Below are positions 77 to 60,800 of a DNA stretch of 64,000 bases, piece by piece; the first letter of the stretch is position 1, and each line of letters starts with the position of its first letter. The DNA comes from Phallusia mammillata (taxonomy: Eukaryota). The DNA lies in NCBI GenBank assembly GCA_965637545.1, contig OZ281497.1, positions 7,068,001 through 7,132,000 on the forward strand, in the 5' to 3' direction. A model generated the notes under the pieces. It saw nothing but the letters and a program-made list of their open reading frames with translations, was not told the origin of the DNA and searched no databases. The position numbers and the translations under genes were made by a program.

Positions 77-3000
77 GCAAGGCGATCACTAGATGTCCAA
101 TCCCTACTTTGATACTGAATGGTGTTGTTTCGACTAATGGTGTGAATCCGGGCAGTGCTCAATACAGCTGCAACCCAGGGTACGAGCTTTACGGCAATAG
201 GCTAAGAGAGTGCCTTACTGACGGTACTTGGTCAGGGGAGAAACCCACGTGTGTTCAAAACGTCGGTAAGTGAGGTTTTACCCGTTAACAAAATTGGACG
301 AAAATCAGTTGTAATTAGTGACCTAAAGTTCTCAGGGCTTAGGAACACAACTGCAACTAAGTTGGTATTATTCGTTGTGTATAGCATAAACCAAATGATA
401 TTATTATTTGACGTGATCGCTGGTCTGCATGAACGCTCTATGGTAAACCCGGGTATGAGTTTACGTGTTTGACACAAGTACAATTTTTGTAAGGTTTCTG
501 CAACAACCCACCATCTATACTGAACGGCTGGTACAAACTCGTGTATAAAGACACCAGTGATCAATCCAATGCTAAACCGGACACGAGTGATGTCGATTTA
601 ACTCGCTACGGAGTAGGTCAGATGGTGGAGTACGGGTGTAGATCCGGTTTCCAACTGAACTCCGCGGAAACAAAGAAAACTTGTTTGCGAGATGGAAGTT
701 GGTCCGGGAGCGCACTTGAATGCACATGTGAGATTTGATTTAAAGGTTTAAAAAAACAAAATCGTTTGGAAAACCTGTAAAACGATTTATCATTTTTTGT
801 CGATCACGATTACACTCTCAATTCCCTATTTCAAGCTTCGAAACTTGCATCAAAAATTGTAATCTTGAGCCTGTCCCCCAACATACGTATTAAGTTACAT
901 AAATTATCTTCAAAACAATGTCAATCTATTTTTTTACATCATAAAAGCCAAATATTAATTAAATTGTTTATCCCCCAAACAAAGTGTGGTAAAATGGAAC
1001 GTATGTAAACTTTGAACAAGCCAGGGCATTTTGGTGTATTTGAATGCAGTAGTTTTCACTTACAAGTTGATAAAACCCGAATTGGATTTACAGTGAGAAT
1101 AAGGATCCAATGTCCGTTTCCGAGACCGTTGCAGAACGGTGATGTAGAGGCGACTGGTGTCCACCCGGGTGCTACTATTCAGTACAGCTGCAATTCAGGT
1201 TATGAAATTTCGGGCGATTCGAGAAGACGGTGCCTTGATGACGGTACCTGGTCCGGACAAGCACCCACGTGTGTTCAAAATGTCGGTAAGTCTTATTACC
1301 AGTGAAGATAAGTTTGTTTTGCTTGTGAACAAATTATGTTTTTCATGACTAATGTGTTTTCTTTTGGATGCTTTTAATTTTCTATCCCTAATTTCCAAGA
1401 TTGTATTCATGTACTAAACATATCCTATATCTTATTTGATTCAAAGTTATATGGTATTTCTAATTTTGTATTGGATGGAGAATACATCAAGTAGTAAAAA
1501 CGAGAAAATTTTTCACCTTATCTTTTGTTTACTTTTCTGCAGGTTTTTGCAACAATCCACCATCCATACTTAACGGCTGGTTCAAGATTATTTATGACTC
1601 CCCCGACGAGTCCAACACAAACTCCGAAACGAGTAACGTGGATTTAACTCGCTATGGAGTAGGTGCGGTGGTCGAATACGGATGCAGATCGACTTATCAG
1701 CTTAATTCTGCTGATAAGAGAAAAACGTGTTTGAGAGATGGCAACTGGTCTGGAAGTAACCTGGAATGCATATGTAAGCTAAGACTTTACCATAACTTTG
1801 AATTATGACTATAGGGTGTTAAGCTTTATACATACACAAGCTCAATTGCATCGCTAATTTGATTTCATTTAGTTTGTTGTGGAAAAGAAATAATGCCATA
1901 AAAAAGTGTCAGGTTGTAAATGATTTACAACAGAAAATGCTCTATGATTAAATCCATCAAACTATGTTAGGCTTTTCAAATTCAACTTTGAACATTATTG
2001 TAGTTGTACTTAGGGAGCGGCACAAAGACCTAAAGCCGTTTGAAAGTGATAAATCATAGTCATCAAAAAATTTGGTGAAAACTTAGTAAAGGCTCCGTAG
2101 GTAAATTAAGGTTAAATTCGCTGCACCTACACATACCTTTGAATTAAATAAAATATTTGTTAACAGTGAAGAAAGTGGCACAATGTCCTCTCCCTCCTCC
2201 CATACAGAACGGAGTTTTGGAGGCGACTGGTGTTTACCCAGGAAATGCTGCTCATTACAGTTGCTATTCAGGTTATGAGCTTTCAGGCGATAGTAGAAGG
2301 CAGTGCCTTGGTGATGGTACTTGGTCAGGGGAAACACCCACGTGTGTTCAAAATGTCGGTAAGTAAAGCAATCCTAAAATGATGTGCTCACAAATAATTC
2401 GCGAAGGCCTTTAATATTACTTTCCCTCTTCAGTGACCTTCTAACCACATTTTAACTTGTTTTAAGGTTTCTGCAACAATCCACCATCTATACTAAACGG
2501 CTGGTACAAACTCGTGTATAAAGACACGGATCAATCCAATGCTAAACCGGACACGAGTGATGCTGATTTAACTCGCTACGGAGTAGGTCAAATGGTGGAA
2601 TACGGATGTAGGTCCGGTTTCCAATTGAATTTCGCGGAAACAAAGAAAACTTGTTTGCGAGATGGAAGTTGGTCCGGGAGCTCTTTACAATGCGTACCAG
2701 GTAAAACTTCTGATTGTCTTTTTTTGTTTTTGTTCGCTTTTGCTAACGATTATAGTTGAAGGCACAACTGTGGCAACCTATGTACATTAGAAAACACTAT
2801 TTTTTTTTACTGAAACCAATTTTCAACAACTCTAATACCCAAAAATGTAAAATGTTTCTTTACACATAATTTGTGTTTTCTGCTCTTTTATGTTATACAA
2901 CTTTTAAAATTACATTGGGATAAGCAATCTTTTTTGCTTACGAAAACGCGTCGGTCGAAACAAACATTTTTCAATTTATCTTTTTTTGCAACAAATTTAT

Positions 3001-34844: not shown

Positions 34845-35115
34845 CATGACGTCACTGTCACTTTTTTGCCTCCACGTTTACGCGTATCCACGAATTAAGC
34901 CTTCTTTTGCTATTGTCACTTTCGTTCGTTTTTTTTTCGTTTGCCAGTGCTCAGCTTATTTATCGTCTTTATGTCATCATTGTCATTGTTCTTATTCTTG
35001 CTTGGCACCGCGCAATGCAAGCACATCCAAGTACCGTACCGCCATATAATATACATAACATCTACCGATGCATTGTCCTTTCTCCTTGTCTTTTATGTAA
35101 GGAATAAATCTTGTC
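32404..35115 (+). repeat. Segmental duplication, copy 1 (about 2.7 kb; LURAP exons 2-3 plus flanks)
   Basis: Colinear with 42251-44958 at an offset of about 9845 bp; nearly identical across both exons and the intervening intron. Confidence 0.95.
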
Positions 35116-35475
35116 ATACTCGAGTGTTGCGAGTCAGTTTGGATGTGTAAGGAAACGTCACTGGGGCACCATTATGAAGGGGGCACGTCTTGCTCTGTGA
35201 TTACTCATCTGGTTGATACGTTTGATGAAACCTCTTCAGATGTGGTTGCAAAATAACTTTGTCAAAATTATATAACGCTTGGGAACTTCATGTTGGGGGT
35301 AAGACTGTCAGACTATAGATTCACTGCAACTGCCTGAACAGTTTTTTGTAAAGAGTCAGATTATATTACGCCACCAACGTCCCAATGACATAACAGCTTT
35401 ATGATAATTTTCTAAATACAAAAACAACTCTACAACATCGTTTTTTTAGTTATTCTTATTTTGTTTATAATTAAG

Positions 35476-35684
35476 CTAAACTGGAACGATATGCAAAATG
35501 GCATGCGACTCACCTGATTTTGCAGCAAACAATGAAAACTGAACGCAAAGCCCAATATGAAGAGAAGGAAGACGACAAAAAATTTCGTAAATGTTTGAAG
35601 AACTTCGGTAAACATTAGAACATAAATTCCAAATGTTGGCAATTTTCGTATGAACATGATCAAAACCATCCATGATAGTAAAAT
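35476..35684 (-). pseudogene. Orphan 5'-truncated TRPA1-like exon (S4-S5 region) with donor site
   Basis: Aligns to 53353-53562 with 13 substitutions and 1 indel. Encodes ILLSWMVLIMFIRKLPTFGIYVLMFTEVLQTFTKFFVVFLLFILGFAFSFHCLLQNQ|GTGAGT; the acceptor and first 10 codons are missing. Confidence 0.88.
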
Positions 35685-37821: not shown

Positions 37822-38473
37822 CTGTCACCCGTTGGGCTGCACTTTTGTCAAGCCGTCCTTGTGTTACCACTCCGAAGATAGATGTTGCCTTTTCCAAACT
37901 TACTTGAATCCATTGACCCACTTCAGCTGACAACAGACGAATCTCTTAAACCTAAGGTATAACAGTCAAATGCTATTTCACAACTTTTATTATGTTTGGG
38001 GTGGAATTTGTTGAATCTTTTTAAAACAAGAAAATTCAGTGTGAAAAACCACTAAATCTGTCGCTATGTTTTATTTGTTTTATCAAAACAAATGCATTTC
38101 GCTATAAAAAGCATCATCAGTGTCTAAAAACAAAATAAAAAGCGGGATAAAAGCAAAAAATACAAAAAACGCACACACCCAGACCAACCACAAAAAGCCT
38201 ATCCTCTGTCTTACAGGACTGCAAATCTTTTTAAAACAATCACAAAAAGATTTGAGAGACGATTTAAAATCTTTTGTTTCAAAGTTTAGCATGAGTTGAA
38301 GTTAAATACGAAAATGTTTTGCAATTAAGAATTACCTTTTCCGCTAGACCACCCTCCTAGACTACCGAGTCGTGCGTTTTGAGGAGCATAAAAGCTGTGA
38401 GAATTGAAGTACGACGAAGCAGTAATGGCTTTGTCTAGTATGGCACCACTGTTTAATCCCAACAAGCAAGGGC
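37822..38473 (-). pseudogene. Discoidin (F5/8 type C) domain exons, probably degenerate
   Basis: Exon 38473-38336 (GPCLLGLNSGAILDKAITASSYFNSHSFYAPQNARLGSLGGWSSGK, phase 1-1) splices to 37926 (AEVGQWIQVSLEKATSIFGVVTQGRLDKSAAQRVT), the typical N-terminal half of the domain. No clean continuation was found. Confidence 0.65.
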
Positions 38474-39869: not shown

Positions 39870-42250
39870 CAACATTTATAGTTGTAGGCTGCAATAAGGT
39901 GGCTTTAAATTGCACTTTGAATGAGTGTAAAACAAGGTTTCTAATTTTAGTAGAAATATCGTTCCAAATTACTGGACCACAGTAATGTAAAGACTTTTGG
40001 CCGAGGGTTGTCTGAAATCTAGGGATGAAGAGGTTTTCGCCATCAGTATGTCTCGTGGAGTGGGAAAATGAACCTGTGAAATTTTGGCAAAAAACTCATC
40101 GAATGTTGAGGGGAGTTGATGGTGGTGGAATTTGTGCATAATTTGAGCTATTTAAAGTTTGTTAATATCGGCTAGTTTTAATGGTTTAGTTTTGTGTGAA
40201 TGAGTGTCATGTGGCAGTTTCTTTTGTTATAGGTTATGATTCGCAAGATATTATTTTGCAGCCCTTTTAATTGGTGAAGTACAGGTGCACTCCCACTACC
40301 CCAGAAGCTGATGGCATATTGCAGTTTTGAGTATACAGGGCTATGATCTAAACTTTTGTGGGTTTTTAAATCGACATATTTTCTTAGCTTATACATTAGA
40401 CCAGAATATTTAGCAAGTTGTGTTTGAAGTTGAGTTATATGCTGTGATCAGTTTAATTTGTCATCCATTATAACACCTAAATATTTCATTTTTAGTTGTT
40501 GCCGAGATGAAGTAAAGTTAATGTTTTGTGGGCATTTTGTCACAAGCATGTAGGATGTTTTGCTAATGTTTAGGGTCAGTTTGTTTACTCTCGACCAAAG
40601 GACTATTTGGTGGTTTGTTTTGATTTGCAGATTGCTTAAACTCCTATCAGTCATAATGAGATTATTGTCATGTGCGAACAGCGTAGTTTGCAGGTTGCTC
40701 GCAAGTGGGAGGTCATTTTTATACATTAACAATAGAAGAAAACCAAGCTTCGAGGCTTGTGGAACCCCATTGATCCATGTGTATTGGTACCGGTTGGTTA
40801 AATGTGACTCAAATAAATTTAAAACTACGCCACGTATAGCAAAAAACGTTGCATTTTGGACAGTAAAATTTTGTGGTTTATGGTGTCGAATGCCTTGGTT
40901 AAATCTAGTGAGATGCAGCATGATGCGAGTCCCCTTATCAGCATTATGCATAAGTTGGTCATGTATAACATGGAGGGCTAGCATAGCGGAGTGATCTCTT
41001 CTAAATGAAACTGTTGTTCATACAATAATTTATATTTTTCGAGGTATAGATAAAGTCGGCAATGTATTATATGTTCAAATATTTTGCTGAATGTGGATAG
41101 GAGTGATATTGGCCTGTAGTTTGTGCATTTATTGGTATGGTCCTGATTTCTAAATTGGGATTAGTTCAGCAATGTTTAACGTATCTGGATAGATTCCCTG
41201 TTGCACGCAGTTGTTAAAGATGGTGCTTAAAGGCAGTGTTTCATACCGGAACGGAACGAAACGAAATAACGTTATTCGTTCTGAGCAAATTATTTATTTT
41301 GTTATTTCGTTCTGGACCGATATTTTCATTTTTTTCCGGTCTGACCGAAATAAATTTATAACGGTATTTTTTTGTAATTCGGCCTTAACAAAAGAACATT
41401 TCTTTATGGTCTTTACAGCTATTAAGCGAGAAAAGAAGAAAGTTACAACACACAAAAATTATTGTCGGGAGTTGTTACGTCACATAACATTTGTCAATGA
41501 TGGTCAAACGAATGTAAATTGTAAGAGCTTAACGGCGCAAAATTTTCAGCAATTGTTTGATGTCAAGTGTTCAGAACGAAATACCGGAATGAAAAATAAC
41601 GGTATTTCGTTCCGTTTCGGTATTTTGAATTTTTTATTTCGGTATTTCGTTCCGGTATTTGAGCCAAAAATTATTTATTTCGTTCCGGTATAACGTTCCG
41701 TTACGTTCCGGTATGAAACACTGCTTAAAGGATACGCGGTGACTTCCTTTGACATTTTAATAAATTTGACTGAAATGCCATTGTGGCGTAAAGCTTTTTT
41801 CAGTCTAATGAGGCAATAATTGATAAACTTTCATGTGGTGTGGAAGGTGTTATGAACAGAGACTGGAAAATGCTTTTAAAATGCAAAGTGTGTAGGATAT
41901 TTGCTGTTGGTATTTTCTCCGCAAGCTTCTGGCCAAAGTTGGAAAAAAAATCATTAAAAGTTTCCACAATTTCTTTCGAGTCTTGAGTTTTTGTTTCTGT
42001 CAGTTTCGATACATGAAATGGTGTTGTGTTTTCGTCGTTTGATATTTATCAAGTCATTAATCATTTGCCATGTCCTACCAGAGTTGTTATTGTTATTAGC
42101 CAGAAGTTTTTCTTTTTGTATTGGACAATAGCCTTGTTGAGGATGTTTCTGTATAAGTTGCAACGTGGGGCATTACCAAAGTTTTTATTGCGATACATTT
42201 TAGCAAACATTTTATGTTTTACTGCAATTGACTTAATAATTGCCTTGCCT
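39870..42250 (-). mobile_element. Decayed, 5'-truncated LINE of CR1/L2 type (ORF2 reverse transcriptase region)
   Basis: Frameshifted fragments RTWQMINDLIN, GVPQASKLG (cf. GVPQGSxLGP), LFAHD (cf. LFADD), KLTLNISKT, KYLGVIMDDKLN, YSKLQYAISFWGS, LQNNILRII, GPVIWNDI. Boundaries are approximate. Confidence 0.85.
41234..41723. mobile_element. hAT-like MITE, 490 bp, nested in the LINE
   Basis: Perfect 20-bp TIR CAGTGTTTCATACCGGAACG; perfect 8-bp TSD CTTAAAGG at 41226-41233 and 41724-41731; many CGTTCCG / CGGAACG subterminal repeats. Confidence 0.9.
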
Positions 42251-44958
42251 TGTTATGTGGTTCAGATTACAAATCTCCTTCAAATATTAGCATTTTAAAC
42301 TAGCTTCGCAAATTGTACTTGGACATACCACCATGTGTAACTAAAGCATTCCAAAATGGTAATGCTACAGACAATGTATTTCCGATGTGAAATATAATTA
42401 TACGTTATCGACTTGATTCTGTCTGGTCGATCAAAAAATATAATCACTAGAACTTGGTAATTACAGCTACGCCGTAATTACAGTAACGGCGCCTACACAA
42501 ACGGGACAAGTGCCACGGCGAGAGTTGACTTTAATCGACCTCGACAACAATGGAATTCACGACTGTAATTTTTCTTTGCAGAAACAACTTTGTGAGCTCG
42601 ATAGCGACATCTTGCGAAAATTCGTGCGCCTGAACGACTGCATCGACGACATGCGCTGGCAACTCGAGCAGCGTGAAGCTGATCTTAAACGCAGCATGGA
42701 ACAAGATGACGTCATCACCATCCAGGATGACGTCATGAACGATGCGGGACGTCCAAATCCATGGGAGGAGGATTTAAAACGGTTGTCCGAAGACGAAAAC
42801 GACAACATCGAAGAGGATGACGACATGAAGTTTGTAGCTCCGGTTACCAAGGCAACCACGTCATACGCCACGTTGACGTCAGTTCGTAGCAGCAAGCCAG
42901 GCGTGACGAATAAGTCGTATGCCAAACCCACGTATGGGCATGTGGATGAAAAAGGAACAATGACTACAGACAGATCGAAAGATCAACAGGAACACAGTCG
43001 GCAAGATTTTTATAGGTAAGTTTAACTCTTCTTGACAATTTGGTTTAAGGCAGTTGCAGAATTAAATCTTGATAAAGTATAAGAGCAAACTGACCAAAAT
43101 GTGTCGCAAGGCCACAATCACCACATTTCAAAGTTAAAATACGCGTCTGTGAGCAGTTTTGTTTTGTCTTTTGGTAGTGGACTATTTTAAGCAAAAAAAT
43201 CAAAGCCAGTATTTGCGTGTTAAACATGACTAGGTTTCAACTGATTTGCTCAGAATATTTACAACCGTGCATTGCATGTGCACACAAGGATTTCATATTT
43301 CGCCTTTTAGACTTTTTTCATGCAACTGAACGCAACGTAAGTTAAGACAAAACCTTGTAAACTAGGCTCGCTTGTATGTTCAGCCCACTGTTATCCACAC
43401 CACGTGACGTTGGTAAAGTCAATTGAGCGTGACGAACTTCGCTCTGCTTTTTGCGGTTCGTGAGAAGGTGTGCCTTAATATGGCGCTGGTGGTTTAAAAC
43501 TCTTGTTGAAGTGACAGTTGTGGGAATCTTACACAGGCCTTGTAATGTACAGCTCGTAGTGAGCCAGGTTGAGTAAATGACGTTTCGCACGCTACTTCCA
43601 TTTCACGAAATGTATCATATTGTGTAGCCCTTAGAGGAAACTTTCTGTTTCATTATGCAGCTTGTAGCATTTGGACCATGTGTTTGGTGTCATGCTATGT
43701 TTTCTGAAAAACAACTAAAGCTTTTGATATACTTGACAGTCTTCCAAACTTTAACTGTTTTCGAAATAGTAGCTTCTTGGTTGCTATTGTTTTTGCATGG
43801 ATAAACGCAGCTACATGCGATGTTGGGCTTAGCCTAAATGTCAAGTTTTAAAATCTGTGCAGCACATAGTAACATTTTCCCAATGTTTTTTACTTGTAGA
43901 ACCAAACCACTCAGGCCGACCTCTGCAAGCCAGGTGGCCTACACCACCTACCAAAAACAGCAACAGCAACATCCAGTGCAGCAGACTAACTACCAGCCCT
44001 ATCACCAGCACCAGCGTGTTGTTCCAAACCAGCGGCCAGCCTCGGCGTCCAACGCTAACAAGAAATACGCCACTCGCGCTGTATCGTTCCAATCATCTGG
44101 CCGAGACTCGGCGTTTCGACCAATCAGAAGCAATCAGCAGTCACGTGATTCGGCCACGACATCACGTGACTCAAACCCGAGGGGCGACCGTGTTCTCGTC
44201 AGGCGAGTGTCGGACTTTCAAAAGCAACGAGATTACCAGAATCTGATTGACTTGTCACGTGTCAGAGGATCGAACCAATCAGGTGGTGGTCATCCGCAGC
44301 ATCAGCAGCCGCAAAGACCTCAGATGAATGTGCCAGGTTCGCGAACCTCTACGTCATCTATTGCGTCATCTGCTTCGTCCAACTCATCTGCGTCATCACT
44401 TCGCTCTCCCACGCGGCCCTCTGTGGCGCGTAGCAGCAGCCACAAGTGGGCGCGCTTTGGCTTGGGCAAGGCTAGTAAAGCGCCACAGCCTGTAGTTGAA
44501 GCCAAGCCTATGGCGCCGCCACAAAGTCTTGTCACACAACAGCAGAAGAGGACAAGTCTCTCGCGGCGCGGTAATGACGTTATGATTCCACGTGACCAAA
44601 ACGTCATCACGGTGTCATATAAGCGCACGACCGCAAACGACTCTGTCTATAGTTGGATCCAGAGTCAAGATGACGTCACGTATTTGTAACATGACGTCAC
44701 TGTCACTTTTTTGCCTCCACGTTTACGCGTATCCACGAATTAAGCCTTCTTTTGTTATTGTCACTTCGTTCGTTTTTTTTTCGTTTGCCAGTGCTCGGCT
44801 TATTTATCGTCTTTATGTCATCATTGTCATTGTTCTTAATCTTGCTTGGCACCGCGCAATGCAAGCACATCCAAGTACCGTACCGCCATATAATATACAT
44901 AACATCTACCAATGCATTGTATTTTCTCCTTGTCTTTTATGTAAGGAATAAATCTTGA
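42251..44958 (+). repeat. Segmental duplication, copy 2
   Basis: Colinear with 32404-35115; weaker similarity continues to about 45280 versus about 35400. Confidence 0.95.
42582..44689 (+). CDS. Second copy of LURAP exons 2-3 with no exon 1 of its own: alternative 3' cassette or partial pseudogene
   Basis: Exons 42582-43015 (434 nt) and 43900-44689 (790 nt) have the same lengths and splice sites as copy 1 and open frames. Changes include R>C (KQLRELD to KQLCELD), N>K, H>Y, A>T, T>S, S>A. Confidence 0.7.
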
Positions 44959-45807
44959 CATATTTGAGTGTTATAGGTCCGGTTGTATATAAGTGTGTGG
45001 AATAGTCACTAGGGGCCCATTCTGAATATGACCTATTTTGCCCTGTGTTTTTTCTCCGTCGTAGCTTATGCACCTGGTGAAATAGTTTAATGTATCTTAA
45101 TGATACTTTTTCGGCTGGCTATAGTTGTAAAATACTTTTGTCCAAATTGCATACCATTTGGACACTTCATATTGCAGGTAATGACTTGCTACGTAGGACT
45201 AGGAATCTACTCCAATTACCCCAACAATCTCCTGTAAAAATCAGCTTATAATTCGTCACCAACGCCCAATTATTTGGCCCTATTATTTGGACTTTCCACC
45301 ATACAGCTTGTTTTGTCTCCCCTCACAACAGAAACACGTTCAAAAGCTTTGCATCTGTTGCCCATGCGTTTCTCTCCGAAAGCAATTATATATACTACAA
45401 AGATTTTCTAGGACCAGATGTAAATTATGCTACAATCTAAATATGGGATCTACGGCAAAATAGACTGAACCCAAAGCCAGATTTTCTACGATTTTTGATG
45501 CAAAAGAATCTAAAAAGGGAATAATGTCGAAAATAAAGAGTGTTTTATAAATAACGGAGGTAAAATGTTTCAAGTAGAATATTTAGCACAAGACTAAAAC
45601 ACAAAATAACCCTTATAGGCTAGATTTCTGAGTATTGGTTATGTCATATAGCATGGTTGAAAAAGATTAAAGATGGAAAGAGTAACACAGCTGAGGGGAT
45701 GTCATTGCTGTTCATAAAAGTCAATGTTTCAAATATACACAAAGATCAGTTGCAGTCAGAAGGCCATTATTTGCTATTTCTGTTTTTGACAGTAACCAAT
45801 AATGCTA

Positions 45808-45883: not shown

Positions 45884-46951
45884 ATCTAAATGTAATGCAA
45901 TTCTTATCTTAATGTAGAGTGCCAAAACCGTGACATGAGAGAATAAACAAGCATAGTTGCTGTGTAATACCTACATTTTTAAACTTCCAAAATTAAATAC
46001 TCTATTCCGGGAGTATAATTTGCATACATTATTTGCCCAGGATCAATAAACTGCCTAAATACACTTATATAACAGTATAGCCTTTGTAGAGTCAAGTCGA
46101 GTCGAGTCGAGTCAAGTGTTGATTTAAACAACACTAATTTGATGTTTCTATAGTATCATGACGATGAACCTTTGAAAGCATTGTCCGGAATGTTACATTA
46201 TTTGTACTCAACTGCGTGGTTCTGTTAAAGGAACGTTAGCATTTGCGAAAAAAAATTCATGGATCGGGTTTTCACCAATAAAAGAACATAAATCTAACCT
46301 CAGGGTTTTAAAACTAGGACACCAATAATATATGTTTCTGGTTTTTATTTGCTACCACTCTTTGAGGTGTCTACAAATACCATTACAAACAAAAAAACTT
46401 CATTAGATTTAAATGTATAACCTCTCGTTATCAACTATCACTTACGAAAGACGGCTGTCAAAAAAGTTAGACAAATAATTATCAGAACTTTTTTTGATTA
46501 AATTGTAAATTTACAAGTGAAAGCTTCCATTTATATTGTACGAACACCTGAATATGATTTGTTAAGCCGAACTCTAGGAACACATGACGCAAAATGAAGT
46601 TACCTAAAATTTTTGAAAGCTTTTTGACGTCTGTTAGATAAGATGACTTTATCCATTTTCGGGTGTGTCGTATTTACAAAAATTCAGATTTGTAATCGGG
46701 ATGTGGTTTAAACTGCACCAAAATGTGAGGTTCCTGATTTGGGGATTGCGCCTTTCGCAGCTTGATGCAATATTCAGCTGGGCACACGAAAGGAAAGAGT
46801 TGCATAGGAATAAAATGTGTCATGTCCATCCATATCCCCGTTTTTCGGTGTTAAACCGGCAATCAATTTGGATTATAAAACTAAAAGATGATAAAGTGAA
46901 AATTTTAAGTAAACATAGTTCAAAAACACTAAAACGTTACCTAACTAGTTA

Positions 46952-47135
46952 GGATGAACATTAATTCATAACTGGGATGAGCCCTGAAGCGTCTATGCAG
47001 ACCAGCGATCACGGCACACTCATATACAAATCACAGTACGCCAGGCCCTTTGAAGGCGCCATACCGAACCAGCCGGCATGCACCACCATATGGCAAAGCG
47101 TAGGCTAGACAAAGGCCTGGCGTACTGTGATTTAT
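46952..47135 (-). mobile_element. Internally deleted sibling of the palindromic element at 51004-51539
   Basis: Same unique tail (GATGAACA..TTCATAACTGGGAT..CCCTGAAGCGTCTATGCAGACC) and same opposite end (GGCCTGGCGTACTGTGATT); 11-bp TSD CTAACTAGTTA at 46941-46951 and 47136-47146; tRNA-like core absent. Confidence 0.8.
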
Positions 47136-48329
47136 CTAACTAGTTATGTTTAATGGGTAATGTTTTGATATTTTTAAACTATGTTTACTAATTTGAACTT
47201 TTTTGTCGATTAATTTAAATTTAGTTTTATCTTTGTACACTTACGAGTCACTTACTCAGTGTTATCTGTCTAATTGTTGTTTTCTTTTTTCGCTATGCTG
47301 TATTCATTATTTATTCCCCTATGGCAAGTTTTGTATCGAGTTGGCCATGCCTGATTGCCCACGTAATAACCCGGATGTACATTGTTTGTCGTTACACCAT
47401 TCGTTGATACACATTAACCAGTTTCGTTGGATGGAAAGTACAGTTAGCCTTCTCTGGGTGTCCTATGGTAAATCGTGTCCTGTTGTGTGTAGCTTTTGGT
47501 TGAATTGTAAGGTGCAGTTGGTTTGTGTATTTTATATCTGTTTGGTCAAACAAGACGCCTTTTATTAAAACCAGCTTGTGGCCTCTCTTTGGCTTTCGAG
47601 GTTAACCGCTTTTTGTGCAGTTAGGTTCTTTTTCGGTTAGGGATGTAGTTTTGGTAAAATAAAAAGCTATAGGTTTATGGGAGGCGAGTAGGGTAAACGA
47701 TCTCGCTGAAAATTCGTTTAAACTGCCGAAATAATTTGCAACAGAAAAAAAAAATATTTCCAACAATCAACATAGCGCGCAACAGTTTAAAATTTGGTTG
47801 GAATAAAACGGCTAAAAACAAAAATATTTATCTGATGAATTTGGTATTCATTGAGGGACGAATAAGACTTGTTTTTTAGAGCAGTGGTGCAATTTAAACC
47901 GAGATCCATAATGTCCTCTATTTGCCCATAAATGATTGATATTTTGTTCTTTCTCATGGTGAGTGGTGACTTTGCTCGAAGAAACTTTAAACATTGTTAC
48001 TGTGTCTTGCGATTAAAAGTGCAGTTGTTTACCGTTTCTTGAAACATTCTTGACGGATAAAAAGCTATTTTGCGACCACGTAGAACATAGTATTCAGTGT
48101 AACATCAACATTTCACCCAAACAAAGGATTTAATTTTTTTTTGTCCATTCGCGTTGTGCATGATCGACCTGATCACTTCGCAAAAGACAACAGAAAATCA
48201 AGTTTGCACAATCAGGTTTTTGAACTGCATTTTCTATGTTTCCATTTGAGTGTGGGAAACCCACTACAACAGCAATTATATTTTAAGGGTTGCGTCCTCT
48301 TGTCAAAAATAAAAGTAAAACTTTACCGA

Positions 48330-50635: not shown

Positions 50636-51179
50636 GGCTATGGTCAATCAAAGTTTCCGGCCAAAATCGTCTGTTCAAAAGCGATTCGGGTCCGGGTCTG
50701 GCTTTGGGCTTCTACTTTCGGGTTGATACTTTAACTTCGGGTCCACATACAACTCTGCCTTATACCCCAAAAATGTTTTGTAATTGTTGTACATTTCCTT
50801 TTATTTTCTATGCATGTAAATACGGCTTTGTTTTGATGTTAACACAGCGTGTGTGGCAGGTGAATATTGTACGATATTCACGTTTTCGGCCGATAGTCCT
50901 AGCTTGATCTTCGGGCTGATTGTGGTGACATGTTGTCGCTGTGTCACAGTGGACTTGTGCAGTTGTGTAATTGTCGAATTAAATTGTAACTTGTTGGAAC
51001 TTTTAAGATGAACATAAATTCATAACTGGGATCAGCCCTGAAGCGTCTATGCAGACCAGCGATCACGGCACACTCATATATAAATCACAGTACGTCAGGC
51101 CCATTGAAGGCGCTATACCGAATCAGCCGGTCACCAAGCATTCACCACCATATGGCAAGGCGTAGGCTAGAAAAATCTA

Positions 51180-51252
51180 GCCTGCGGTGGGATTCGAACC
51201 CACGACAGGAGTCTTTCCGGGACTCGCGCTCTACCAACTGAGCTACACAGGC
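51180..51252 (-). ncRNA. tRNA-like cloverleaf (SINE head), left arm
   Basis: GCCTGTG TA GCTC AGTTGGTA GAGC GC GAGTC CCGGAAA GACTC CTGTC GTGGG TTCGAAT CCCAC CGCAGGC: all four stems pair, A and B boxes intact, followed by a T5 tract. The anticodon loop lacks U33. Confidence 0.7.
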
Positions 51253-51369
51253 CCAGTGGGGAATCCGCCGAAAGTCGAATCACAAGCACCGTTGCCTGCC
51301 TCGTATGCTGCACATGTCAGCTTCGTAGTAGGGATCTTGTGATTCGACTTTCGGCGGATTCTCCACTGG

Positions 51370-51442
51370 GCATGTGTAGCTCAGTTGGTAGAGCGCGAGT
51401 CCCGGAAAGACTCCTGTCGTGGGTTCGAATCCCACCGCAGGC
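51370..51442 (+). ncRNA. tRNA-like cloverleaf (SINE head), right arm
   Basis: Same 73 nt as the left copy except C3>A, which breaks one acceptor-stem pair; A and B boxes intact. Confidence 0.65.
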
Positions 51443-51556
51443 TAGATTTTTCTAGCCTACGCCTTGCCATATGGTGGTGAATGCTTGGTGACCGGCTGAT
51501 TCGGTATAGCGCCTTCAATGGGCCTGGCGTACTGTGATTGTTGGAACTTTGTAACA

Positions 51557-51562
51557 TTTATT
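51557..51562 (-). terminator. Putative poly(A) signal of the TRPA gene
   Basis: TTTATT on + (AATAAA on -), the first canonical signal I found after the TRPA stop at 51854. Confidence 0.5.
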
Positions 51563-51853: not shown

Positions 51854-54800
51854 CTAGTTGGTGGCGTCATTGTCGTCAAGTTTGTTCCCACCGACATCAA
51901 AATGTGACATGATCGTTGACATTATACCTTCCATTGACCTTAAACGGTTGTCAAGGGCTACCATTAAGGACTCGACTTTTTCATCCAGAGATCCCACTTT
52001 CTCTTTAAGGGAGACATCTTGATCTTCGAGCTTGTCGCGCTCGTTCTGGAAATTTGGACAATACAAAAAAACTGAATAAAAATCATGTGCAGTCCCCAAA
52101 ACTCATCAATACATTAAAAATGAGTTCCAACATATAATAAGGCCTTTGTATTTAGCTACACTTTTCAGAAAAGTTGTTTTCCACCTTTTCAGGGTTAAGA
52201 GCTTCTTTGATGGTTAAGTGGTTCAAATTTTTCTCCGAATGCCACCAATGTATAAAAGCAGGCATTTTGCGGTAATAATTTGGGTAATATCGTCGATACT
52301 CATGTAAAACCATACGTCGAATAAACAGAGGCAATGAGTACTGGACATCCAGGGTTAATTTTACCTGCAAAACACATCGTCAAGATATACCATAGCAACG
52401 ACCAAAAGTCACTTTCGGGTAAACGCACATACTGAAGTAAAAATTAGACGAGTAATAAACATCCTTATCATTATGTTACCTTATCTTTGTTTCGGCTGAA
52501 CAAATTGGATAATACGTTTGGAGAAGTATTACTAGCCTGTGGAAAGTGTAGACTTATGTTATCACACCACTTACCTGCATTGTCAAACCTTCAAGTTCTG
52601 CATTTTCTTGCACGCCTTGAATATCGTCGACTGCAAGACCGACCTGTAAACACCATAACATTCATGTATCGTTCTCTGGAATTGACTTGTACTAATCGAA
52701 TGCAAAGTTTGCACTTAAAATTTTTCACACTACTTAACCTAAACAGGTTATCGTGTAGCCTATTAGTTAGTTACTGTACAACAGCTTTGTGCCTACGCGT
52801 TTACCAGCAAGTTCATAAGAATGATGCTCATTATAATGACAAAGACCACGAAGAGAATATAAGATACAGGTCGGTATTTCACCTGTGGAATAAAATGTAA
52901 AGTTGTAAATAATAAAACAACAACAACAACCTACGACGCAAGGACGGCTTTTGCAAACTTACAGTGGAAACACTTATTGTGTGACTGTCTGCTCCAGTCT
53001 CAATCGCCTCAGCTTCAGCCACAAAAATGTCTTCAAATCCAAGATCCCCGGTCATCATGAGTGAAGTCTTGATCAACGCGTTCCACCATTCTCGAAACGC
53101 ATACTATGCCACAAACAAAATTTTTCCAAAAAATTAAAAGAGGCACTAAACTCTAAGTATAGATTTATTTACCAGTAGCTTTACAAAATTACGAATGATG
53201 TTGAAATAAAGTAGACATTTTATTACTTCCGAATTTCGAAACACCAGAACATTTACATGAGAAAAGGCCTCTGAGGAAACGTTGTGCAACAAAATGTCTG
53301 CGTTTCAGTCTACAACATTGTCTTTAGGTTTGGAAGTTTGTTTTCAATCAAACTAAACTGGAACGATATGCAAAAATGGCATGTGACTCACCTGGTTTTG
53401 TAGCAAACAATGAAAACTGAACGCAAAGCCCACTATGAACAGAAGGAAGACGACAAAAAATTTCGTAAATGTCTGAAGAACTTCGGTAAACATAAGAACA
53501 TAAATACCAAACGTTGGCAGATTTCGTATAAACATGATCAAAACCATCCACGATAGTAAAATGCTGACTGCTCCAACCTGCCACTGCCAATCCTGTCAGC
53601 AACAAAAGATTTAAAGGTGAACGTCTAGCTTGCAGATATTTATAACCCACCTCTCTGACACCTAAGTAGTTTGGTCCAGCTGAACTTGTGTCTGAATAAA
53701 CAGTGAGAATCGCAAGAACGTAAAGCGAAACTTCGAGAAGGTTTGTGAAGTTTTGAAAATAAGTAATCCTTTGCGAGTAAACCTGATATAACTGAAAAAG
53801 ATGTTTATGTTTTTTAATTACAGAAATCCATAGGTTATTAGGCTTATGATTCCAAACAAGCAAAAGGAGCATACTTATCATATAAAACTTAGTTGGATAA
53901 CACATCTGGTTGATGTAAGGAATATGTCATTTTTTTGTTATTTATGTCAAGATTTTTAAAAAAGTTACTGTTTTAAATATGACAATATTACCAGGTATAT
54001 GGAGCACAGTATATACTATCTGTTTAACTCGATTGTGAATTTAAACGGTTGTTGGTTGAGATCATTGTTGTGTTATGTAATATGTAATGTTAATTGTCCA
54101 TAGATTAACATATACATTTTATCACCTCTTTTAATAAACTAATTGCTGAAAGGACAATGACAAAATATTTGGCAACAATTCCAAATGAGTTGTAGTCATA
54201 ACAATGTCCAAATGTCGGTTGCGCTTCAGTGATTATTGCCACGCATGATGATGTCACGTTGCCCGAATCTGTGTGGAAATTAGCTGTTCTTTTTTGGATC
54301 GCGTTTATTCTTAGAGTGCAAAAAACTTTCGTTAAAATTGCTAGCAGCCCTGCAACTGCCTCAATATGGTTATAGTTTAAGGGTTTATAGTTATTTGAAT
54401 AAAGTTATGCGTCAACGCAACTTTGTGTGTGTCGAGACACTAAACTTACCAATAGAATATGGGGGAGGCATCGACAACATGTACATGTTAAAAAATACCA
54501 TGAACATCAAGTAGAGCGACAAATTGAGACAATACACAAGCCTCACAAACTTTTTCCACTTGTAATTTAACATACTGACAACCAGTGGGTGGCGCAAGAG
54601 ATTCTTTCGTTTTGCTTCAACCTGTGTACAGAAATTACCATACATGTCTTACATAACTTAAAATCAGCAAGAAGCTGTAGGTCATAACTAGCGCATCAAA
54701 TTATATTTACCATAATGTTTAATGGATGGTTTTTCTTGAGAAAGTTTGAATCATTAGAGTATGGAACTGCACCTTTGTCGTTCACATCTTCCTGTTAAAA

Positions 54801-57800
54801 CAATATATTTTTTAGTGTTTCCTATATATGTTACTAGTAAATTCAATTTCGAGTATTTAAAAGATACAAATTTGAAGCACCACAGGAGAAGTTTAACCGG
54901 AACAGCTCAACCTCGAAAATCATGTCAAAGGGCAACTGTATAGTAAAATTTTAAATGTCAGAAAAAAATATGGGTTTAAATAAAAAGTAAAATGTTGCTG
55001 TGAATTTGTTTGAAAATTAAACTAGAACCTTGTCATCTTCATTGTCTCCAGACCAACTCGTACTGAAAAATTCATCATCCAAAAATTCGTAATCAAATGT
55101 AACCTGTATAGATAAACAAATTCAAGAGACAACCCATAAGAGAATAAACGCAAGCAGTAATTTTCGGCAACTTAAAATTAAAACTTAAAATTTTGAAACT
55201 AAGACCGAAATATTTGTTTTTACCTCGTATAATTCATCTTCAACAGGAATATCTTCAATTTTAATGAATTTTGCAAAAACTTCTTCAGCAATCATCGGCA
55301 TCTTCCTGATCAACTTTCTCATTGGGGTGTCATTAAACTCATCATCAACTGTCAAAAAATAATGAAAATGATTGCAGAGAAAGTATGTTTGCCCAGGTAC
55401 ATAAACAGGAACACAGATGATACAAAATATTAGCAAAGTTAGCTCTTTAAAGCAAGTGTTTTATCATCTATAATGGCATTGTAACGTCCCGTGAACGCGC
55501 CCCGGTTATAGCGCGGAACGTCACACGAGGAGAGAATTGAAACGCGATTCCTAATAGCCTCCAACAACCAGTCCACACAGATAGATGTTTTGCTGATCTT
55601 ATTAGGCGAATTCTTTGAATGTAGGACGATGAAAACGAATAGGAAACGTATAGGAAACGTATAGGAAACGGTTTCTGCATAAAGCATGACATTAACACAC
55701 TGCGCTTTAAATGCAGAAATATAGCACAAATCTTACCAACTGTTGTGGTAACCGGAGAGAGTAAATAGCACGGGTATTCAACTCGCATCAATTACTGGTA
55801 CACACCTAAACGTACAATAACATATATCACCACACTGCGCCTTTATGACGTCACACACAGTTCTTACCAAGCTATGTTGGGCGACAGTACAGAATAAGTC
55901 ACGCTTCACGTGAAGATAAAACAGAAATACTGCGTAAACAAAATGCAACTTAAGCACCTTGTCTAAACCCAATTACACGTACAGTACAACTATTACAAAG
56001 CGAATGACATATTAGGTCATTGCGGTTAAGATTACATTCATTACAATAATTCACATTTTGGAGTCATTAAACACATATGTACAAAGTGACTCACCAATAA
56101 TCGTCAACACGACAATAAATAGCCTTTTCTAATTCAACCGACGCAGCACCGTGCTCCACGGAAGTCAGCAACGAAAAGAACTGAACCACGTTGCGTTATC
56201 ACACAAAACTGGCAGCCGATTATTACGTCACACAACGCCATAGATTACAACACAAGTTGTACTGAGGAAATGCGGGAATCAATAGAAATCTGCAATTACT
56301 GGCAAATAAGATGTAACATACCCCCCCACAATGTACGAATCCAAGGAGTACATTTACAACACAACACAAACATCGGCAGTAATTGCGAACACAATAAACA
56401 CACAACTAATCACGCATCGCGGCATAGCAAGCACAATTTTGCAATTGGGCGTCTGAGTGCTCCAGTGTGAGTCTTGACGATCACCTGACGCACTACTCCC
56501 TTCCGATCAGGAAGCACATCGGTCACGCGACCCAGAAGCCATTTGCTCCTAGGCTGATTATCATCCGCTACAAGCACAATGTCGCCGACCGTGAAATTAG
56601 AATGTCCATTTGCCCACTTCGATCTGGGCATTAGCGTCGGCAGGTACTCGCGCGACCATCGCCGCCAAAATTGGTCGGCCAAGTATTGTACTTGGCGCCA
56701 ACGGTTACGATGGAAACAGTCCTTCCCCGTAAACAGTCCAGGGGACATATTCGGCGCTGCACGTTGCAGCAGTAGGTGATTTGGTGTAAGGGGCTCCTCA
56801 TCCTTCGAATCGAACGTCACCGGAACCAAGGGACGAGAGTTCAGGATGGCCTCGACCTCCACCATCAGCGTCATCAATTTCTCATCGGACAATGTCTGCT
56901 CCGAAAGCAGAGCGTTGAGAATTTTGCGCACAGAGCGTATCATTCGCTCCCAAACCCCACCCATGTGGCTGGCAGTGGGAGGATTGAAGCTCCACGCAAT
57001 ATCACGTTGTTGCAGATATTTGTAGATCTGCCTTTGATTCCACCTGTTCAGCTCTTCGCGCAGGATGCGCTCAGCTCCAACGAAGTTTGTGCCGTTGTCG
57101 CTGTAGATCTGGTCTGGTCGTCCTCGACGACCGATGAAACGTCGGAGAGCTCCGATAAAGGAGTCCGTAGACAGTGAATGCGCTATCTCGATGTGCGCGG
57201 CCCTGGTGGAGAAACAGCTAAAGATGCACCCGTACCTCTTTACCTCACTTCGTCCTTGCTTCACAAGGAAAGGTCCAAAGTAGTCGACACCGACCACTGA
57301 GAACGGCGGCTTATTGGCCTGCAGTCTCGCAGCAGGAAGGTCTGCCATCATCTGTTTGCCCAGAGAGCCATTTCTTCGTCGACAGGAAACACACTTGCCG
57401 AGAACACGACGAACCGCTACCCCTCCTTTGATGATCCAGTAGCGTTGCCTGAGAGACGACCATGTGTGTCCCATTCCAGAATGGCCAACCTCGTCATGCT
57501 GCTGCATAATCACCAGGTCTGTAAATCGATGGTCGTATGGAAGAATCATCGGATGCTTCACATCAAACTCGACACATGCACGCTCGAGCCTTCCACCAAC
57601 TCTCATAACTCCATTGACAAGAATTGGGTTAAGCTTTCCAAGAACCCTCTTTTTCTTTGGTAAACGAACAGGTTCGCCTTTGGCCTTTGACATCGCAGCC
57701 ATAACGTCTGGGAAACTTCGTCTCTGCACATACTTTACAATCTCAAGCTCGGCAGCCTTGAGTTCAACAACGGTCAGTTGCCCAGTAGGTGCTTGATACT

Positions 57801-60800
57801 TGGCAGGAAACCTCCTTGACATCAACATCGATTTGAATCTGAGCAACCAGCTTACAGCCCTTTTCAGCCGATTGAGTGATGAATATCTGGCAATGAGTCG
57901 ATCCGTAGCGGATTCGCTGGCGACCAGACAAACGGTTTGAGTTTCTTTCTTTAACAAAAGAAATTCGATTGGCAATGACGACAAGTCCGGACAGGTAGGC
58001 CATCCATCTTCTTGCTCCCAGAGAAACTGGGGTCCAGTAAGCCATCGGCTGGACCTAAGGAATTTATTCACACTGAGTCCACGAGACGCCTCGTCCGCTG
58101 GATTTACCTTGGTGCTGACGTGTCTCCATTGACTAGGCCGGGAAACATCCTCGATTTTGGCCAAGCGATTTGCAACAAACACTGGAAAGCGCTTATTGCA
58201 GTTGCGAATACTTTGAAGAACCGCAGTCGAATCCGTCCAGAACACGGATTGGCATTCGTCTAGTTGCAGCTCCTTTCTTACAAGTTGATCCAACTTCGCT
58301 GCAACAACGGCCGCCGTCAACTCCAAGCGGGGAATCGAACATGTCTTCAGGGGGGCAACGCGTGCCTTGCCTATTACAAACGAGCAGTGAATGCGTCCTC
58401 GCTCGTCTACCAGCCTCAGATAGGTCACCGCACCGTAAGCTGTAGATGACGCATCTGCAAAATGGTGCAATTCCGTTTTTCGCACCTTACCAAAATCGTG
58501 GGGCTTCACGCATCTTGGTAGAACGACGTCTCCTAACCGCGGTAGTTGCTGCAACCATTTTGCCCACGATTCGGAGTCTTCATCGGAAAGAACGTCATCC
58601 CATCCCAGCTGCTTTCTGCAGAGATCTCTTTGCATAGTCTTGGCCACCACGATCACAGGCGCTGCAAAGCCAAGAGGATCGTATAAGGAACTTACCACCG
58701 ACAGGATTGTCCTTCTGGTGTAGGCTGTAGGCTGCTTTACATCGACATTGAAACCGAACTCGTCCGACGAAACGTTCCATCGAACACCAAGTACCCTCTC
58801 GCAGGAGGAACCATCCACGTCCAGCTCCTTCACCGATTTAGCCCGTTCCTCTTCATCAATAGACGCGAGAACTCGCTCGCTGTTGCTAAGCCACTTGGTT
58901 AGCCGAAATCCCTTCTTCTTGAGAAGTGCACAAATACCTTTGACCAACTGAACTGCTTCTGCTTCAGTCGACACGGATTTTAAACAGTCGTCAACGTAGA
59001 AATTCCTTTCTACCGTCTCGACGACTTCCTTTGGAAATTCGCTTCGCAAATCATTAGCGGCTTGTTTAAGACAAAAACTCGCGCAGGAAGGGGAAGAAGT
59101 TGCTCCAAACAAATGAACGAGCATCCTGTGCGCGGTGGGCTTCTTCGACACATCGCCATCAGGCCACCACAAGAACCGAAGCGCATCGCAGTCTGTCGGC
59201 TTCACACGTATCTGATGAAACATGGCCTCGACGTCGGCGACAAGAGCTACCTTTTCCATCCGAAATCTTGAAAGAACTCCTACTAAGGAATTGGTCAGAT
59301 CCGGACCCTGGAGTAAAGCATCATTCAACGACTGGTCGCGGTATTTGGCAGCACAGTCAAAAACTACCCGTACTTTCCCGGGCTTGTGTGGATTTGTAAC
59401 AGGGTGATGCGGCAGGTACCATACTACCTCTGCAGACTGTTTCTCATCTGGAACTTCTTCGGCATAGCCCTTAGCTATGTAACCCTGTACCGTCTTTGTA
59501 TACGCATCGCGTAGCACGGCGTCGCGTCTCATGCGACGTTCCAAAGAACCCAAACGATTTAGCGCCATGTCCCGGTTGCACCGAAGCGGTTGTGCGTTCG
59601 GGCGCCATGGCAACGGCAACTCGTAATGACCTTGCTTGAATTGCACACTGGTTTTCATTTTATCTAAGACGTACCGGTCTTCACGCGACATAGGCATCGC
59701 GTCGGCGTTAGTATCTTGAAAGTCGGTCTTCCACATTCGCTCTAACTTCTCGTGCAGCGAATCATTGGCAACTTGAGTAAAGTTGACGGAAAACAAACCA
59801 GTTGACTTGTTAGAGACAGGTCCTGCCAATGCCCATCCCAGTGGAACTTTAAATGCAACAGGTTGCTTCGGTTTTCCCTTTCGTACCTCTTGCACGAGAA
59901 AGGCCTCTGGAACGTCCAGCCCGATGAGCAGCAAAGCTTCACTGCAATCTACCTGTGGGAATGACAGGTCTCTGATATGTGGAAGCGCATCTAATTCCGC
60001 GTTTCTCGGAAACTTGTTGGCGGTAATAGGCAGACAATCAACAGCGAACACCTCGGGGAGTTCAACAGTTGTGGAGCCATCAAGCGAAGCAACAGATAAA
60101 TTTACTCTTTTGCCCTTGCGCCTGCGACTGTCCCCGTTGACCGTTTTAAGCGTCACGTTGCTCGCTTCACCTCGTAGACCAAGCTTGTCTGTCAGTTTTT
60201 TGTCGCACAAAGTAATGCCCGAGCCAGTATCTAAAAGAGCGTAAGTATCTACAGTCCTACCGTTAGCACGGACTTTGACCGCAACCATCATCAAGTTGAC
60301 GCTCTGTCTACCAGAGGAAGCATGACAGTCCTTTCCAATCGCCGACACAACCGAACAAACTGTCCGTTCCGGCGCAGGTCCTTTGACAGGAGACTCGTCC
60401 TCTCTCTTCTCTGGCGGATGCAATAAGGTGTGATGGGCTTCATTGCAGTCCCTGACGGTACACGCTTTGGGGCTGTTGCACTTAGTAGCAAAGTGCCCAA
60501 ATCTGAAACAATTATCACAGAGTCTGCGGCGCCGGGTGACGCGCAGACGATCACGGTAACACCGGGATTTAAATTCCTCGCATTTAGCAAGCACGTGATT
60601 TCCCGAACAGCACTGACAGAGCGGGGCAGTGGGAAAATGAGAAGGTCCGGCACGAGCCTTAGGTCTAGATTCTTGTTCGCTTACAACAACATGACTGGAA
60701 GCCTTTACATGACCACTTTTACCTTTCGCCTTCTTAGCTTCGTTGCGATGCTCATCGAGCATGCGGCTGAACAACGAATTTGCAATCCGATCCTCAGTTT

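What the first reader, a model, noticed from the sequence alone, without database searches (positions are those of the whole stretch)
51004..51539. TSD-flanked palindromic element built from two back-to-back tRNA-like genes
Seen: 204-bp inverted arms with only 3 mismatches, a 49-bp spacer, one outward-facing tRNA cloverleaf with A/B boxes per arm, a unique 79-bp tail on one side only, and an 11-13 bp direct repeat around the whole unit. Established: an ordinary SINE is copied from a Pol III transcript that starts at the tRNA head, so sequence upstream of the head is not carried along, and a T5 run usually stops Pol III. Here the inserted unit includes about 34 bp upstream of each head plus the opposite copy, and T5 follows each cloverleaf directly. 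Inference: this is not a standard SINE insertion. It may be an undescribed non-autonomous family that moves as a fold-back unit, from a longer RNA by LINE- or Penelope-type target-primed reverse transcription (variable TSD, asymmetric tail) or through a hairpin DNA intermediate.
Basis: partly seen in the sequence, partly recalled or inferred. Interest (0 to 1): 0.85.

Follow-up and report, generated by a model that had tools for sequence, protein, structure and literature searches.

The report
Palindromic tRNA-like retroposon, Penelope-style insertion
A short mobile element carrying a tRNA-like gene has inserted in a sea-squirt genome as a head-to-head inverted pair with an extra tail on one side only, a shape that is the known footprint of Penelope-like retroelements rather than of ordinary SINEs.

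Summary
The arms are 204 nt with 3 mismatches, the spacer is 49 nt, each arm holds one outward-facing tRNA-like gene followed by T5, a 79-nt tail lies on the left only, and an exact 13-nt target-site duplication flanks the whole unit.

A second, independently inserted copy at 46952-47135 decides the reading. It has its own 11-nt duplication and sits in the centre of a host fold-back. It keeps the same 3' tail. Its direct part is 5'-truncated before the tRNA. Its inverted part is only 22 nt, yet ends within 5 nt of the same internal site.

So the element has a fixed 3' end and variable 5' ends, as in target-primed reverse transcription. The inverted copy is most likely remade at each insertion and always lacks the last 74-79 nt. 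That matches the published Penelope-like (PLE) pattern of an adjacent inverted 5'-truncated copy, a one-sided tail and a short duplication.

My best reading (about 0.5) is a non-autonomous element with a tRNA-like module, copied by a PLE-type enzyme. It has no hammerhead ribozyme. No partner element is in the window and no further copies could be fetched. LINE twin priming and a fold-back master RNA remain open.

The genome is an ascidian close to Phallusia mammillata. Unchecked scan notes report similar tRNA-like inverted and tandem units elsewhere in it.

The parts
50991..51003 (.). Left target-site duplication of copy 1 (TTGTTGGAACTTT).
   Evidence: Exact 13-nt direct repeat with 51538-51550.
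51004..51082 (-). 3' tail of the direct copy, 79 nt. It is the fixed 3' end of the element and is absent from the inverted copy.
   Evidence: It is 96% identical to 46950-47026 in copy 2 and 78% identical to 409-466 in copy 3. It shows no significant fold of its own, z -0.41.
51083..51177 (-). Body of the direct copy. It includes the 8-bp hairpin at 51164-51183, whose loop is the T5 run.
   Evidence: Outer part of the left arm. The hairpin is seen in the fold. T5 is the only run of four or more T in the sense unit.
51178..51253 (-). tRNA-like module of the direct copy, with A and B boxes and a non-canonical anticodon loop CCGGAAA.
   Evidence: ARAGORN. Rfam tRNA 55.3 bits.
51254..51286 (-). 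Leader upstream of the tRNA-like module, carried inside the arm.
   Evidence: Inner end of the left arm.
51287..51335 (.). Unique 49-nt spacer between the two heads. It is probably the 5' extension of one of the two copies.
   Evidence: It has no other match in the window and is not a palindrome.
51336..51539 (+). Inverted copy: leader, tRNA-like module 51369-51444, T5 hairpin and body. It ends 76-79 nt short of the element's 3' end.
   Evidence: Right arm, 99% complementary to the left arm. Rfam tRNA 50.1 bits.
51538..51550 (.). Right target-site duplication of copy 1.
46941..46951 (.). Left target-site duplication of copy 2 (CTAACTAGTTA).
   Evidence: Read. The same 11 nt recur at 47136-47146.
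46952..47113 (-). Copy 2, direct part: the tail plus 85 nt of body. It is 5'-truncated in the loop of the post-tRNA hairpin and has no tRNA-like module.
   Evidence: 89% identical to copy 1 over 173 nt. Alignment.
47114..47135 (+). Copy 2, inverted part: 19-22 nt, the reverse complement of 47027-47047. It ends at the same tail/body boundary as the right arm of copy 1.
47136..47146 (.). Right target-site duplication of copy 2.
   Evidence: With the insert and one duplication removed, the flanks form a long hairpin of -53.8 against -34.5 +/- 4.3 kcal/mol.
409..466 (+). Copy 3: an old fragment with tail sequence only, either extreme 5' truncation or a related family with the same 3' module.
   Evidence: 78% identity to tail positions 9-67. 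nhmmer E = 7.5e-07.

Best explanation
This is a short non-autonomous retroposon whose sense strand is the minus strand. Its layout is a leader of at least 34 nt, a tRNA-like module, an 8-bp hairpin with a U5 loop, a 95-nt body and a 79-nt 3' tail.

It was inserted by target-primed reverse transcription at a staggered break of 11-13 bp, in the manner of Penelope-like elements (PLEs).
- One cDNA starts at the RNA's 3' end and gives the direct copy with the tail.
- A second cDNA is primed from the other DNA end at an internal site 74-79 nt upstream of the 3' end. It gives the inverted copy without the tail.
- Each cDNA runs a variable distance toward the 5' end, and the two are then joined head to head.

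Shown directly:
- A fixed 3' end in two insertions.
- Duplications of variable length.
- Variable 5' ends.
- The outer ends of the two inverted copies lie within 5 nt of each other.
- There is no hammerhead ribozyme.

Inferred:
- The enzyme is a resident PLE reverse transcriptase with its GIY-YIG nuclease.
- The template RNA starts upstream of the tRNA-like module. It therefore does not come from that module's own Pol III promoter, whose transcript would also stop at T5.
For: - The anatomy of copy 1 is confirmed.
- Copy 2 is an independent insertion. It has its own 11-nt duplication, and its rebuilt empty site restores a host hairpin.
- Both copies end at the same 3' sequence...TTCATC(T/C)TA, next to the duplication. 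Copy 3 keeps tail sequence only. This is the pattern of 3'-anchored, 5'-truncated reverse transcription.
- The inverted parts are 204 and 22 nt long. Both stop at sense positions 251-258 of 332.
- In both copies the inverted part is wholly nested in what the direct part also contains.
- The direct cDNA of copy 2 stops in the loop of the hairpin that abuts the tRNA-like fold. Its junction shows AAA microhomology.
- The literature describes PLE insertions as 5'-truncated. [quoted passage not shown] It also reports 8-10 bp duplications and in-trans mobilisation by terminal sequences alone (PMC3846280).
- There is no A-rich or simple-repeat 3' end.
Against: - No PLE gene and no PLE 3' end is in the window, so the partner is unidentified.
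- Only two informative insertions exist.
- The tail is 74-79 nt, against 30-40 nt in the literature.
- No tandem partial copy (pseudo-LTR) is seen here.
- The internal priming zone is one of about three AU-rich patches of the RNA. Agreement of two events is therefore weak evidence against microhomology-driven twin priming.
- That this genome holds many PLEs with inverted arms and tails rests on unchecked scan notes.
Confidence: 0.5

Rival explanations
1. This is an ordinary LINE-mobilised tRNA-SINE in which both insertions underwent twin priming. The second DNA end annealed inside the SINE RNA and primed an inverted cDNA.
For: - The geometry fits: an inverted 5' part, a direct 3' part and a variable duplication.
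- The shared priming zone AUUUAUAUAU is AU-rich, and copy 1 shows 2 nt of microhomology with the duplication.
- The tail occurs alone in copy 3, as a LINE-derived 3' module would.
Against: - In the twin-priming model as I recall it (Ostertag and Kazazian 2001, own knowledge, not read here), the two cDNAs cover adjacent parts of one RNA with a small overlap or gap.
- Here the inverted part is entirely nested in the direct part, by 204 nt and by 22 nt.
- There is no poly(A) or microsatellite end.
- Copy 2 has no microhomology at its priming site.
- The leader and the T5 run are odd for a Pol III SINE.
Confidence: 0.2
2. This is the first reader's idea: the master copy is itself the palindrome. 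It is transcribed as a long hairpin RNA and copied whole. Copy 2 is an internally deleted descendant.
For: - Both copies share both termini.
- The arms are 1.5% diverged rather than identical.
Against: - Copy 2 needs an internal deletion that leaves exactly the outermost 22 nt. Two short cDNAs explain it directly.
- No promoter is evident at the right terminus.
- A 204-bp perfect RNA hairpin is a poor template for reverse transcription.
- Unchecked notes on this genome list tRNA-like units with inverted arms of 51 and 84 bp. If these are the same family, the arm length varies.
Confidence: 0.15
3. This is a DNA transposon, either a long-TIR MITE or a fold-back element, or it moves through a hairpin DNA intermediate.
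For: - It has long inverted repeats and a flanking duplication.
- Copy 2 looks like an internal-deletion derivative that keeps both ends.
Against: - The left terminus (the tail) has no inverted partner.
- No duplication flanks the palindrome alone.
- The duplications are 13 and 11 nt long, whereas cut-and-paste families give a fixed length.
- Copy 3 keeps only one end.
Confidence: 0.04

Closest known systems
Insertion architecture of endonuclease-positive Penelope-like elements (Penelope/Poseidon, Neptune, Naiad, Chlamys)
   Same: - A head-to-head inverted 5'-truncated copy next to the direct copy.
- A 3' tail on one end only.
- A short duplication of variable length.
- Frequent 5' truncation.
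- Terminal sequences alone can be mobilised in trans.
Sources: PMC8557442 and PMC3846280.
   Different: - There is no reverse transcriptase or GIY-YIG ORF.
- No tandem pseudo-LTR is seen here.
- The tail is 74-79 nt, not 30-40 nt.
- A tRNA-like module sits where canonical PLE terminal repeats carry a hammerhead ribozyme.
Metazoan non-LTR retrozymes and schistosome Sm-alpha/Sj-alpha SINE-like elements
   Same: They are short non-coding retroposons. Retrozymes are thought to depend on PLEs (PMC7229834; bioRxiv 10.64898/2026.07.22.740005). The schistosome SINE-like elements appear to be transcribed by Pol III (PMC6765202).
   Different: Those families are defined by a hammerhead ribozyme and tandem units. 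Here no hammerhead core is found on either strand, and the structured RNA module is a tRNA-like cloverleaf.
tRNA-derived SINEs mobilised by LINEs
   Same: - A tRNA-like module with A and B boxes.
- A body plus a distinct 3' module.
- Variable duplications and 5'-truncated copies.
   Different: - The head is preceded by at least 34 nt that are carried along.
- T5 follows directly after the cloverleaf.
- There is no A-rich or repeat tail.
- Both informative copies carry an inverted nested duplicate.
L1 twin-priming inversions
   Same: An inverted 5' segment and a direct 3' segment lie within one duplication.
   Different: The segments are nested duplicates rather than adjacent pieces. Two independent events start within 5 nt of each other. 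There is no poly(A).

Membership tests
PLE-type insertion (PLE-dependent non-autonomous element) | An inverted 5'-truncated copy immediately adjacent to the 5' end of the direct copy | tested here: met
   Copy 1 has 204-nt arms. Copy 2 has a 22-nt inverted piece.
PLE-type insertion (PLE-dependent non-autonomous element) | A short 3' extension (tail) on one end of the insertion only | tested here: met
   The tail is present on the direct copy only, in both insertions. Its length of 74-79 nt exceeds the published 30-40 nt.
PLE-type insertion (PLE-dependent non-autonomous element) | A short target-site duplication | tested here: met
   13 nt and 11 nt. The rebuilt empty site of copy 2 restores a host hairpin.
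PLE-type insertion (PLE-dependent non-autonomous element) | Partial tandem copies (pseudo-LTR) | tested here: not met
   No tandem copy is present at either locus. The literature describes tandems as frequent, not obligatory.
PLE-type insertion (PLE-dependent non-autonomous element) | 3' end shared with an autonomous PLE of the same genome | not testable with these tools
   No PLE is in the window and the rest of the genome could not be fetched.
Canonical PLE terminal repeat / retrozyme | A hammerhead ribozyme motif | tested here: not met
   The Rfam E-value scan finds none. No CTGANGA or TTGANGA core lies on either strand.
LINE-dependent tRNA-SINE | A tRNA-related head at the 5' terminus, so that the Pol III transcript equals the element | tested here: not met
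   33-34 nt of leader precede the cloverleaf in both arms. A caveat is that the leader is seen only in this one insertion, so it could be 5' transduction.
LINE-dependent tRNA-SINE | No Pol III terminator inside the element | tested here: not met
   T5 lies 2 nt after the cloverleaf.
LINE-dependent tRNA-SINE | A tRNA-like fold with A and B boxes | tested here: met
   Rfam 55.3 and 50.1 bits and ARAGORN.
LINE-dependent tRNA-SINE | A 3' end that is A-rich, a simple repeat, or shared with a LINE | tested here: inconclusive
   There is no A-rich or repeat end. A LINE match cannot be tested here.
MITE / fold-back DNA transposon | Inverted repeats at both termini and a duplication of fixed length | tested here: not met
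   The left terminus is the unpaired tail. The duplications are 13 and 11 nt.
Functional tRNA gene | A canonical anticodon loop (U33) and an isotype-consistent structure | tested here: not met
   The loop is CCGGAAA, with C at position 33. It is called Ser-GGA but has a 5-nt variable loop.

The most novel reading that the evidence does not exclude
Tunicates may hold a class of SINE that is copied by Penelope-like reverse transcriptase rather than by a LINE. In it a tRNA-like module, a possible Pol III or RNase P/Z handle, would take the place that the hammerhead ribozyme holds in PLE terminal repeats and retrozymes. Its small size would make each insertion a readable record of the still unexplained two-ended priming of PLEs.
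Probability: 0.3. Interest if true: 0.7.

Novelty: new variant of a known kind. Interest (0 to 1): 0.5.

Why it matters
How Penelope-like elements build their tandem and inverted insertions and their one-sided tail is still described as undefined (PMC8557442). If a 330-nt non-coding passenger shows the same footprint, each insertion is a compact record of where both cDNAs start and stop.

It would also widen the known passengers of PLEs from ribozyme-bearing retrozymes to tRNA-like elements. It would warn annotators too that tRNA-headed repeats in such genomes are not all LINE-dependent SINEs.

Locally, the insertion creates a near-perfect 204-bp hairpin (3 mismatches) and two divergent Pol III-type units.

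Tried and rejected
- Metagenome scan with a conserved 19-mer of the tail. It returned seven loci, all matching the 19-mer only, with GC of 52-71%. These are chance hits.
- Exact-protein look-ups of two window ORFs, meant to fetch more of this genome. Neither is on record.
- Protein search with a 45-aa frame through the element, meant to catch ORFs called on other copies. There were no candidates.
- Profile nhmmer over the window. It found only the three copies.
- Hammerhead search by Rfam and by regular expression. Nothing lies in the element. One CTGATGA...CGAAA string at 38097-38120 (-) has no Rfam support and is taken as chance.
- Snap-back self-priming. The spacer is not a palindrome, its 15-nt near-palindrome is off centre, and copy 2 is not symmetric about its junction.
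- Tail RNA structure. It is not significant.
- Paralogous introns as an empty site for copy 3. They could not be aligned.
- Literature searches for a tRNA-like PLE passenger or for ascidian SINEs. Nothing relevant was found.
- The tRNA of origin was not determined. I recalled some resemblance to Ala and Lys tRNAs, but this was not tested.

Full report
**1.

- The repeat finder gives inverted arms 51083-51286 and 51336-51539. They are 204 nt long, 99% complementary and 49 nt apart. It also gives an exact 13-nt direct repeat at 50991-51003 and 51538-51550.
- ARAGORN and Rfam each find one tRNA-like gene per arm, facing outward, at 51178-51253 (-) and 51369-51444 (+). The Rfam scores are 55.3 and 50.1 bits against a gathering score of 29.
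- The anticodon loop reads CCGGAAA, with C where U33 should be. The call 'Ser-GGA' comes with a short variable loop. It is therefore a tRNA-derived module, not a working tRNA gene.
- A and B boxes are present.
- T5 follows the cloverleaf after 2 nt and is the only run of four or more T in the unit. It forms the loop of an 8-bp hairpin that overlaps the acceptor 3' strand.
- The arm mismatches are at 51260/51362, 51250/51372 and 51095/51527.
- The mismatches, the non-palindromic spacer and the duplication make an assembly artefact unlikely.

**2. The sibling copy is the key**

BLAST and nhmmer find two more pieces of the family in the window.

Copy 2 (46952-47135):
- It has its own 11-nt duplication, CTAACTAGTTA, at 46941-46951 and 47136-47146.
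- With the insert and one duplication removed, the flanks form a long hairpin of -53.8 kcal/mol, against -34.5 +/- 4.3 for shuffles. It therefore landed in the centre of a host fold-back, and its boundaries are confirmed independently.
- It holds the tail (96% identical to copy 1) and 85 nt of body, then stops in the loop of the post-tRNA hairpin.
- After an AAA junction there follow 19-22 nt that are the reverse complement of its own sequence next to the tail.

Copy 3 (409-466) is an old fragment of tail sequence only.

**3. What this shows**

- Taking the tRNA sense (minus strand) as the element's sense, two independent insertions end at the same 3' sequence next to the duplication. The 5' ends vary. 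This is the signature of target-primed reverse transcription.
- The inverted parts are 204 and 22 nt long. Both end at sense positions 251-258 of 332, that is 74-79 nt short of the 3' end.
- In both copies the inverted part is wholly contained in what the direct part also carries.
- The palindrome is thus not a constant of the family. The simplest account is that it is rebuilt, to a different length, at each insertion.

**4. Best mechanism**

- Two cDNAs are made, one from each DNA end of a staggered break of 11-13 bp.
- One cDNA starts at the RNA's 3' end. The other starts at an internal zone just upstream of the tail.
- Both extend for a variable distance and are joined head to head.
- This is the published footprint of Penelope-like elements. 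[quoted passage not shown]
- In the rotifer Adineta vaga, such units carry duplications of 8-10 bp, and terminal sequences alone can be mobilised in trans (PMC3846280).
- The template RNA must begin upstream of the tRNA-like module and pass the T5 run. It therefore does not come from that module's own Pol III promoter. That step is inferred, not shown.
- The 33-34 nt leader is seen only in this one insertion, so 5' transduction from a source locus cannot be excluded.

**5. Limits**

- The window has no PLE gene. Its one large ORF is a BEL/Pao polyprotein.
- That ORF places the genome in or near the ascidian Phallusia mammillata, with 98% identity to one of its proteins.
- I could not fetch more of the genome, so the partner and the family-wide structure remain untested.
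- Unchecked scan notes report many PLEs in this genome with inverted arms, duplications and tails of about 30 nt. They also report tRNA-like units of about 355 bp in inverted and tandem arrays, with arms of 51 and 84 bp. These are leads that fit the reading, not support for it.

**6. Rivals**

- LINE twin priming fits the geometry, and the shared start zone is AU-rich. However, as I recall the model (own knowledge, not checked here), it predicts adjacent pieces rather than nested ones, and usually an A-rich end.
- A palindromic master RNA needs an odd internal deletion to give copy 2, and it lacks a promoter.
- A DNA transposon fails on three counts: the unpaired left terminus, the unequal duplications and the one-ended copy 3.
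- Snap-back priming fails on the spacer and on the asymmetry of copy 2.

**7. Comparison and novelty**

- The architecture is known.
- PLE-dependent passengers are also known or proposed. They include retrozymes and non-autonomous Chlamys elements such as MRC1. The schistosome SINE-like elements, which carry a hammerhead ribozyme and appear to be Pol III transcribed, are a further comparison.
- All animal examples are defined by a hammerhead ribozyme. This element has none and carries a tRNA-like cloverleaf instead.
- I found no paper describing that combination, but the repeat databases could not be searched.
- I class it as a new variant of a known kind, of moderate interest.

**8. Unexplained**

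The arm is bounded by a direct 7-mer, TGTGATT, at sense positions 52-58 and 247-253. The origin of the 49-nt spacer is also unknown.

Noticed in passing
window 55480-62949: An apparently intact, very young BEL/Pao LTR retrotransposon. Its LTR segments are 100% identical (55480-55943 and 62497-62949). It carries one 1950-aa ORF at 56410-62262 (-) with gag-like, protease, RT, Pao peptidase and integrase domains. The ORF is 98% identical to a Phallusia mammillata protein.
   Followed up: partly
window 46875-46940 and 47147-47225: Copy 2 sits at the centre of a host fold-back (MITE-like) palindrome. The 11-nt duplicated target contains the palindrome TAACTAGTTA.
   Followed up: partly
window 32404-35144 and 42251-44988: A tandem duplication of about 9.85 kb at 92-96% identity. 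Each copy holds a 283-aa ATG ORF (33993-34844 and 43838-44689) with no Pfam match.
   Followed up: no
window 51285-51344 and 51531-51539: Each arm starts (CTTGTGATT) and ends (ACTGTGATT) with the same 7-mer, TGTGATT. This could be a template-switch or priming signal, or chance.
   Followed up: no
window 50983-51003 and 51551-51560: The target of copy 1 is a short imperfect tandem of TTGTAAC / TTGGAAC units. Some PLE clades are reported to prefer microsatellite-like targets.
   Followed up: no
window 41233-41271 and 41686-41724: Another pair of 39-nt inverted repeats, 87% complementary and 414 nt apart. It may be a MITE.
   Followed up: no
window 35495-35684 and 53373-53562: A dispersed repeat at 93% identity. 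The second copy overlaps a 185-aa ORF (53348-53905, -) with no Pfam match.
   Followed up: no
window 77-3000: An array of Sushi-type exons with a period of about 1 kb. Copy 3 of the tail lies in one of its introns.
   Followed up: no
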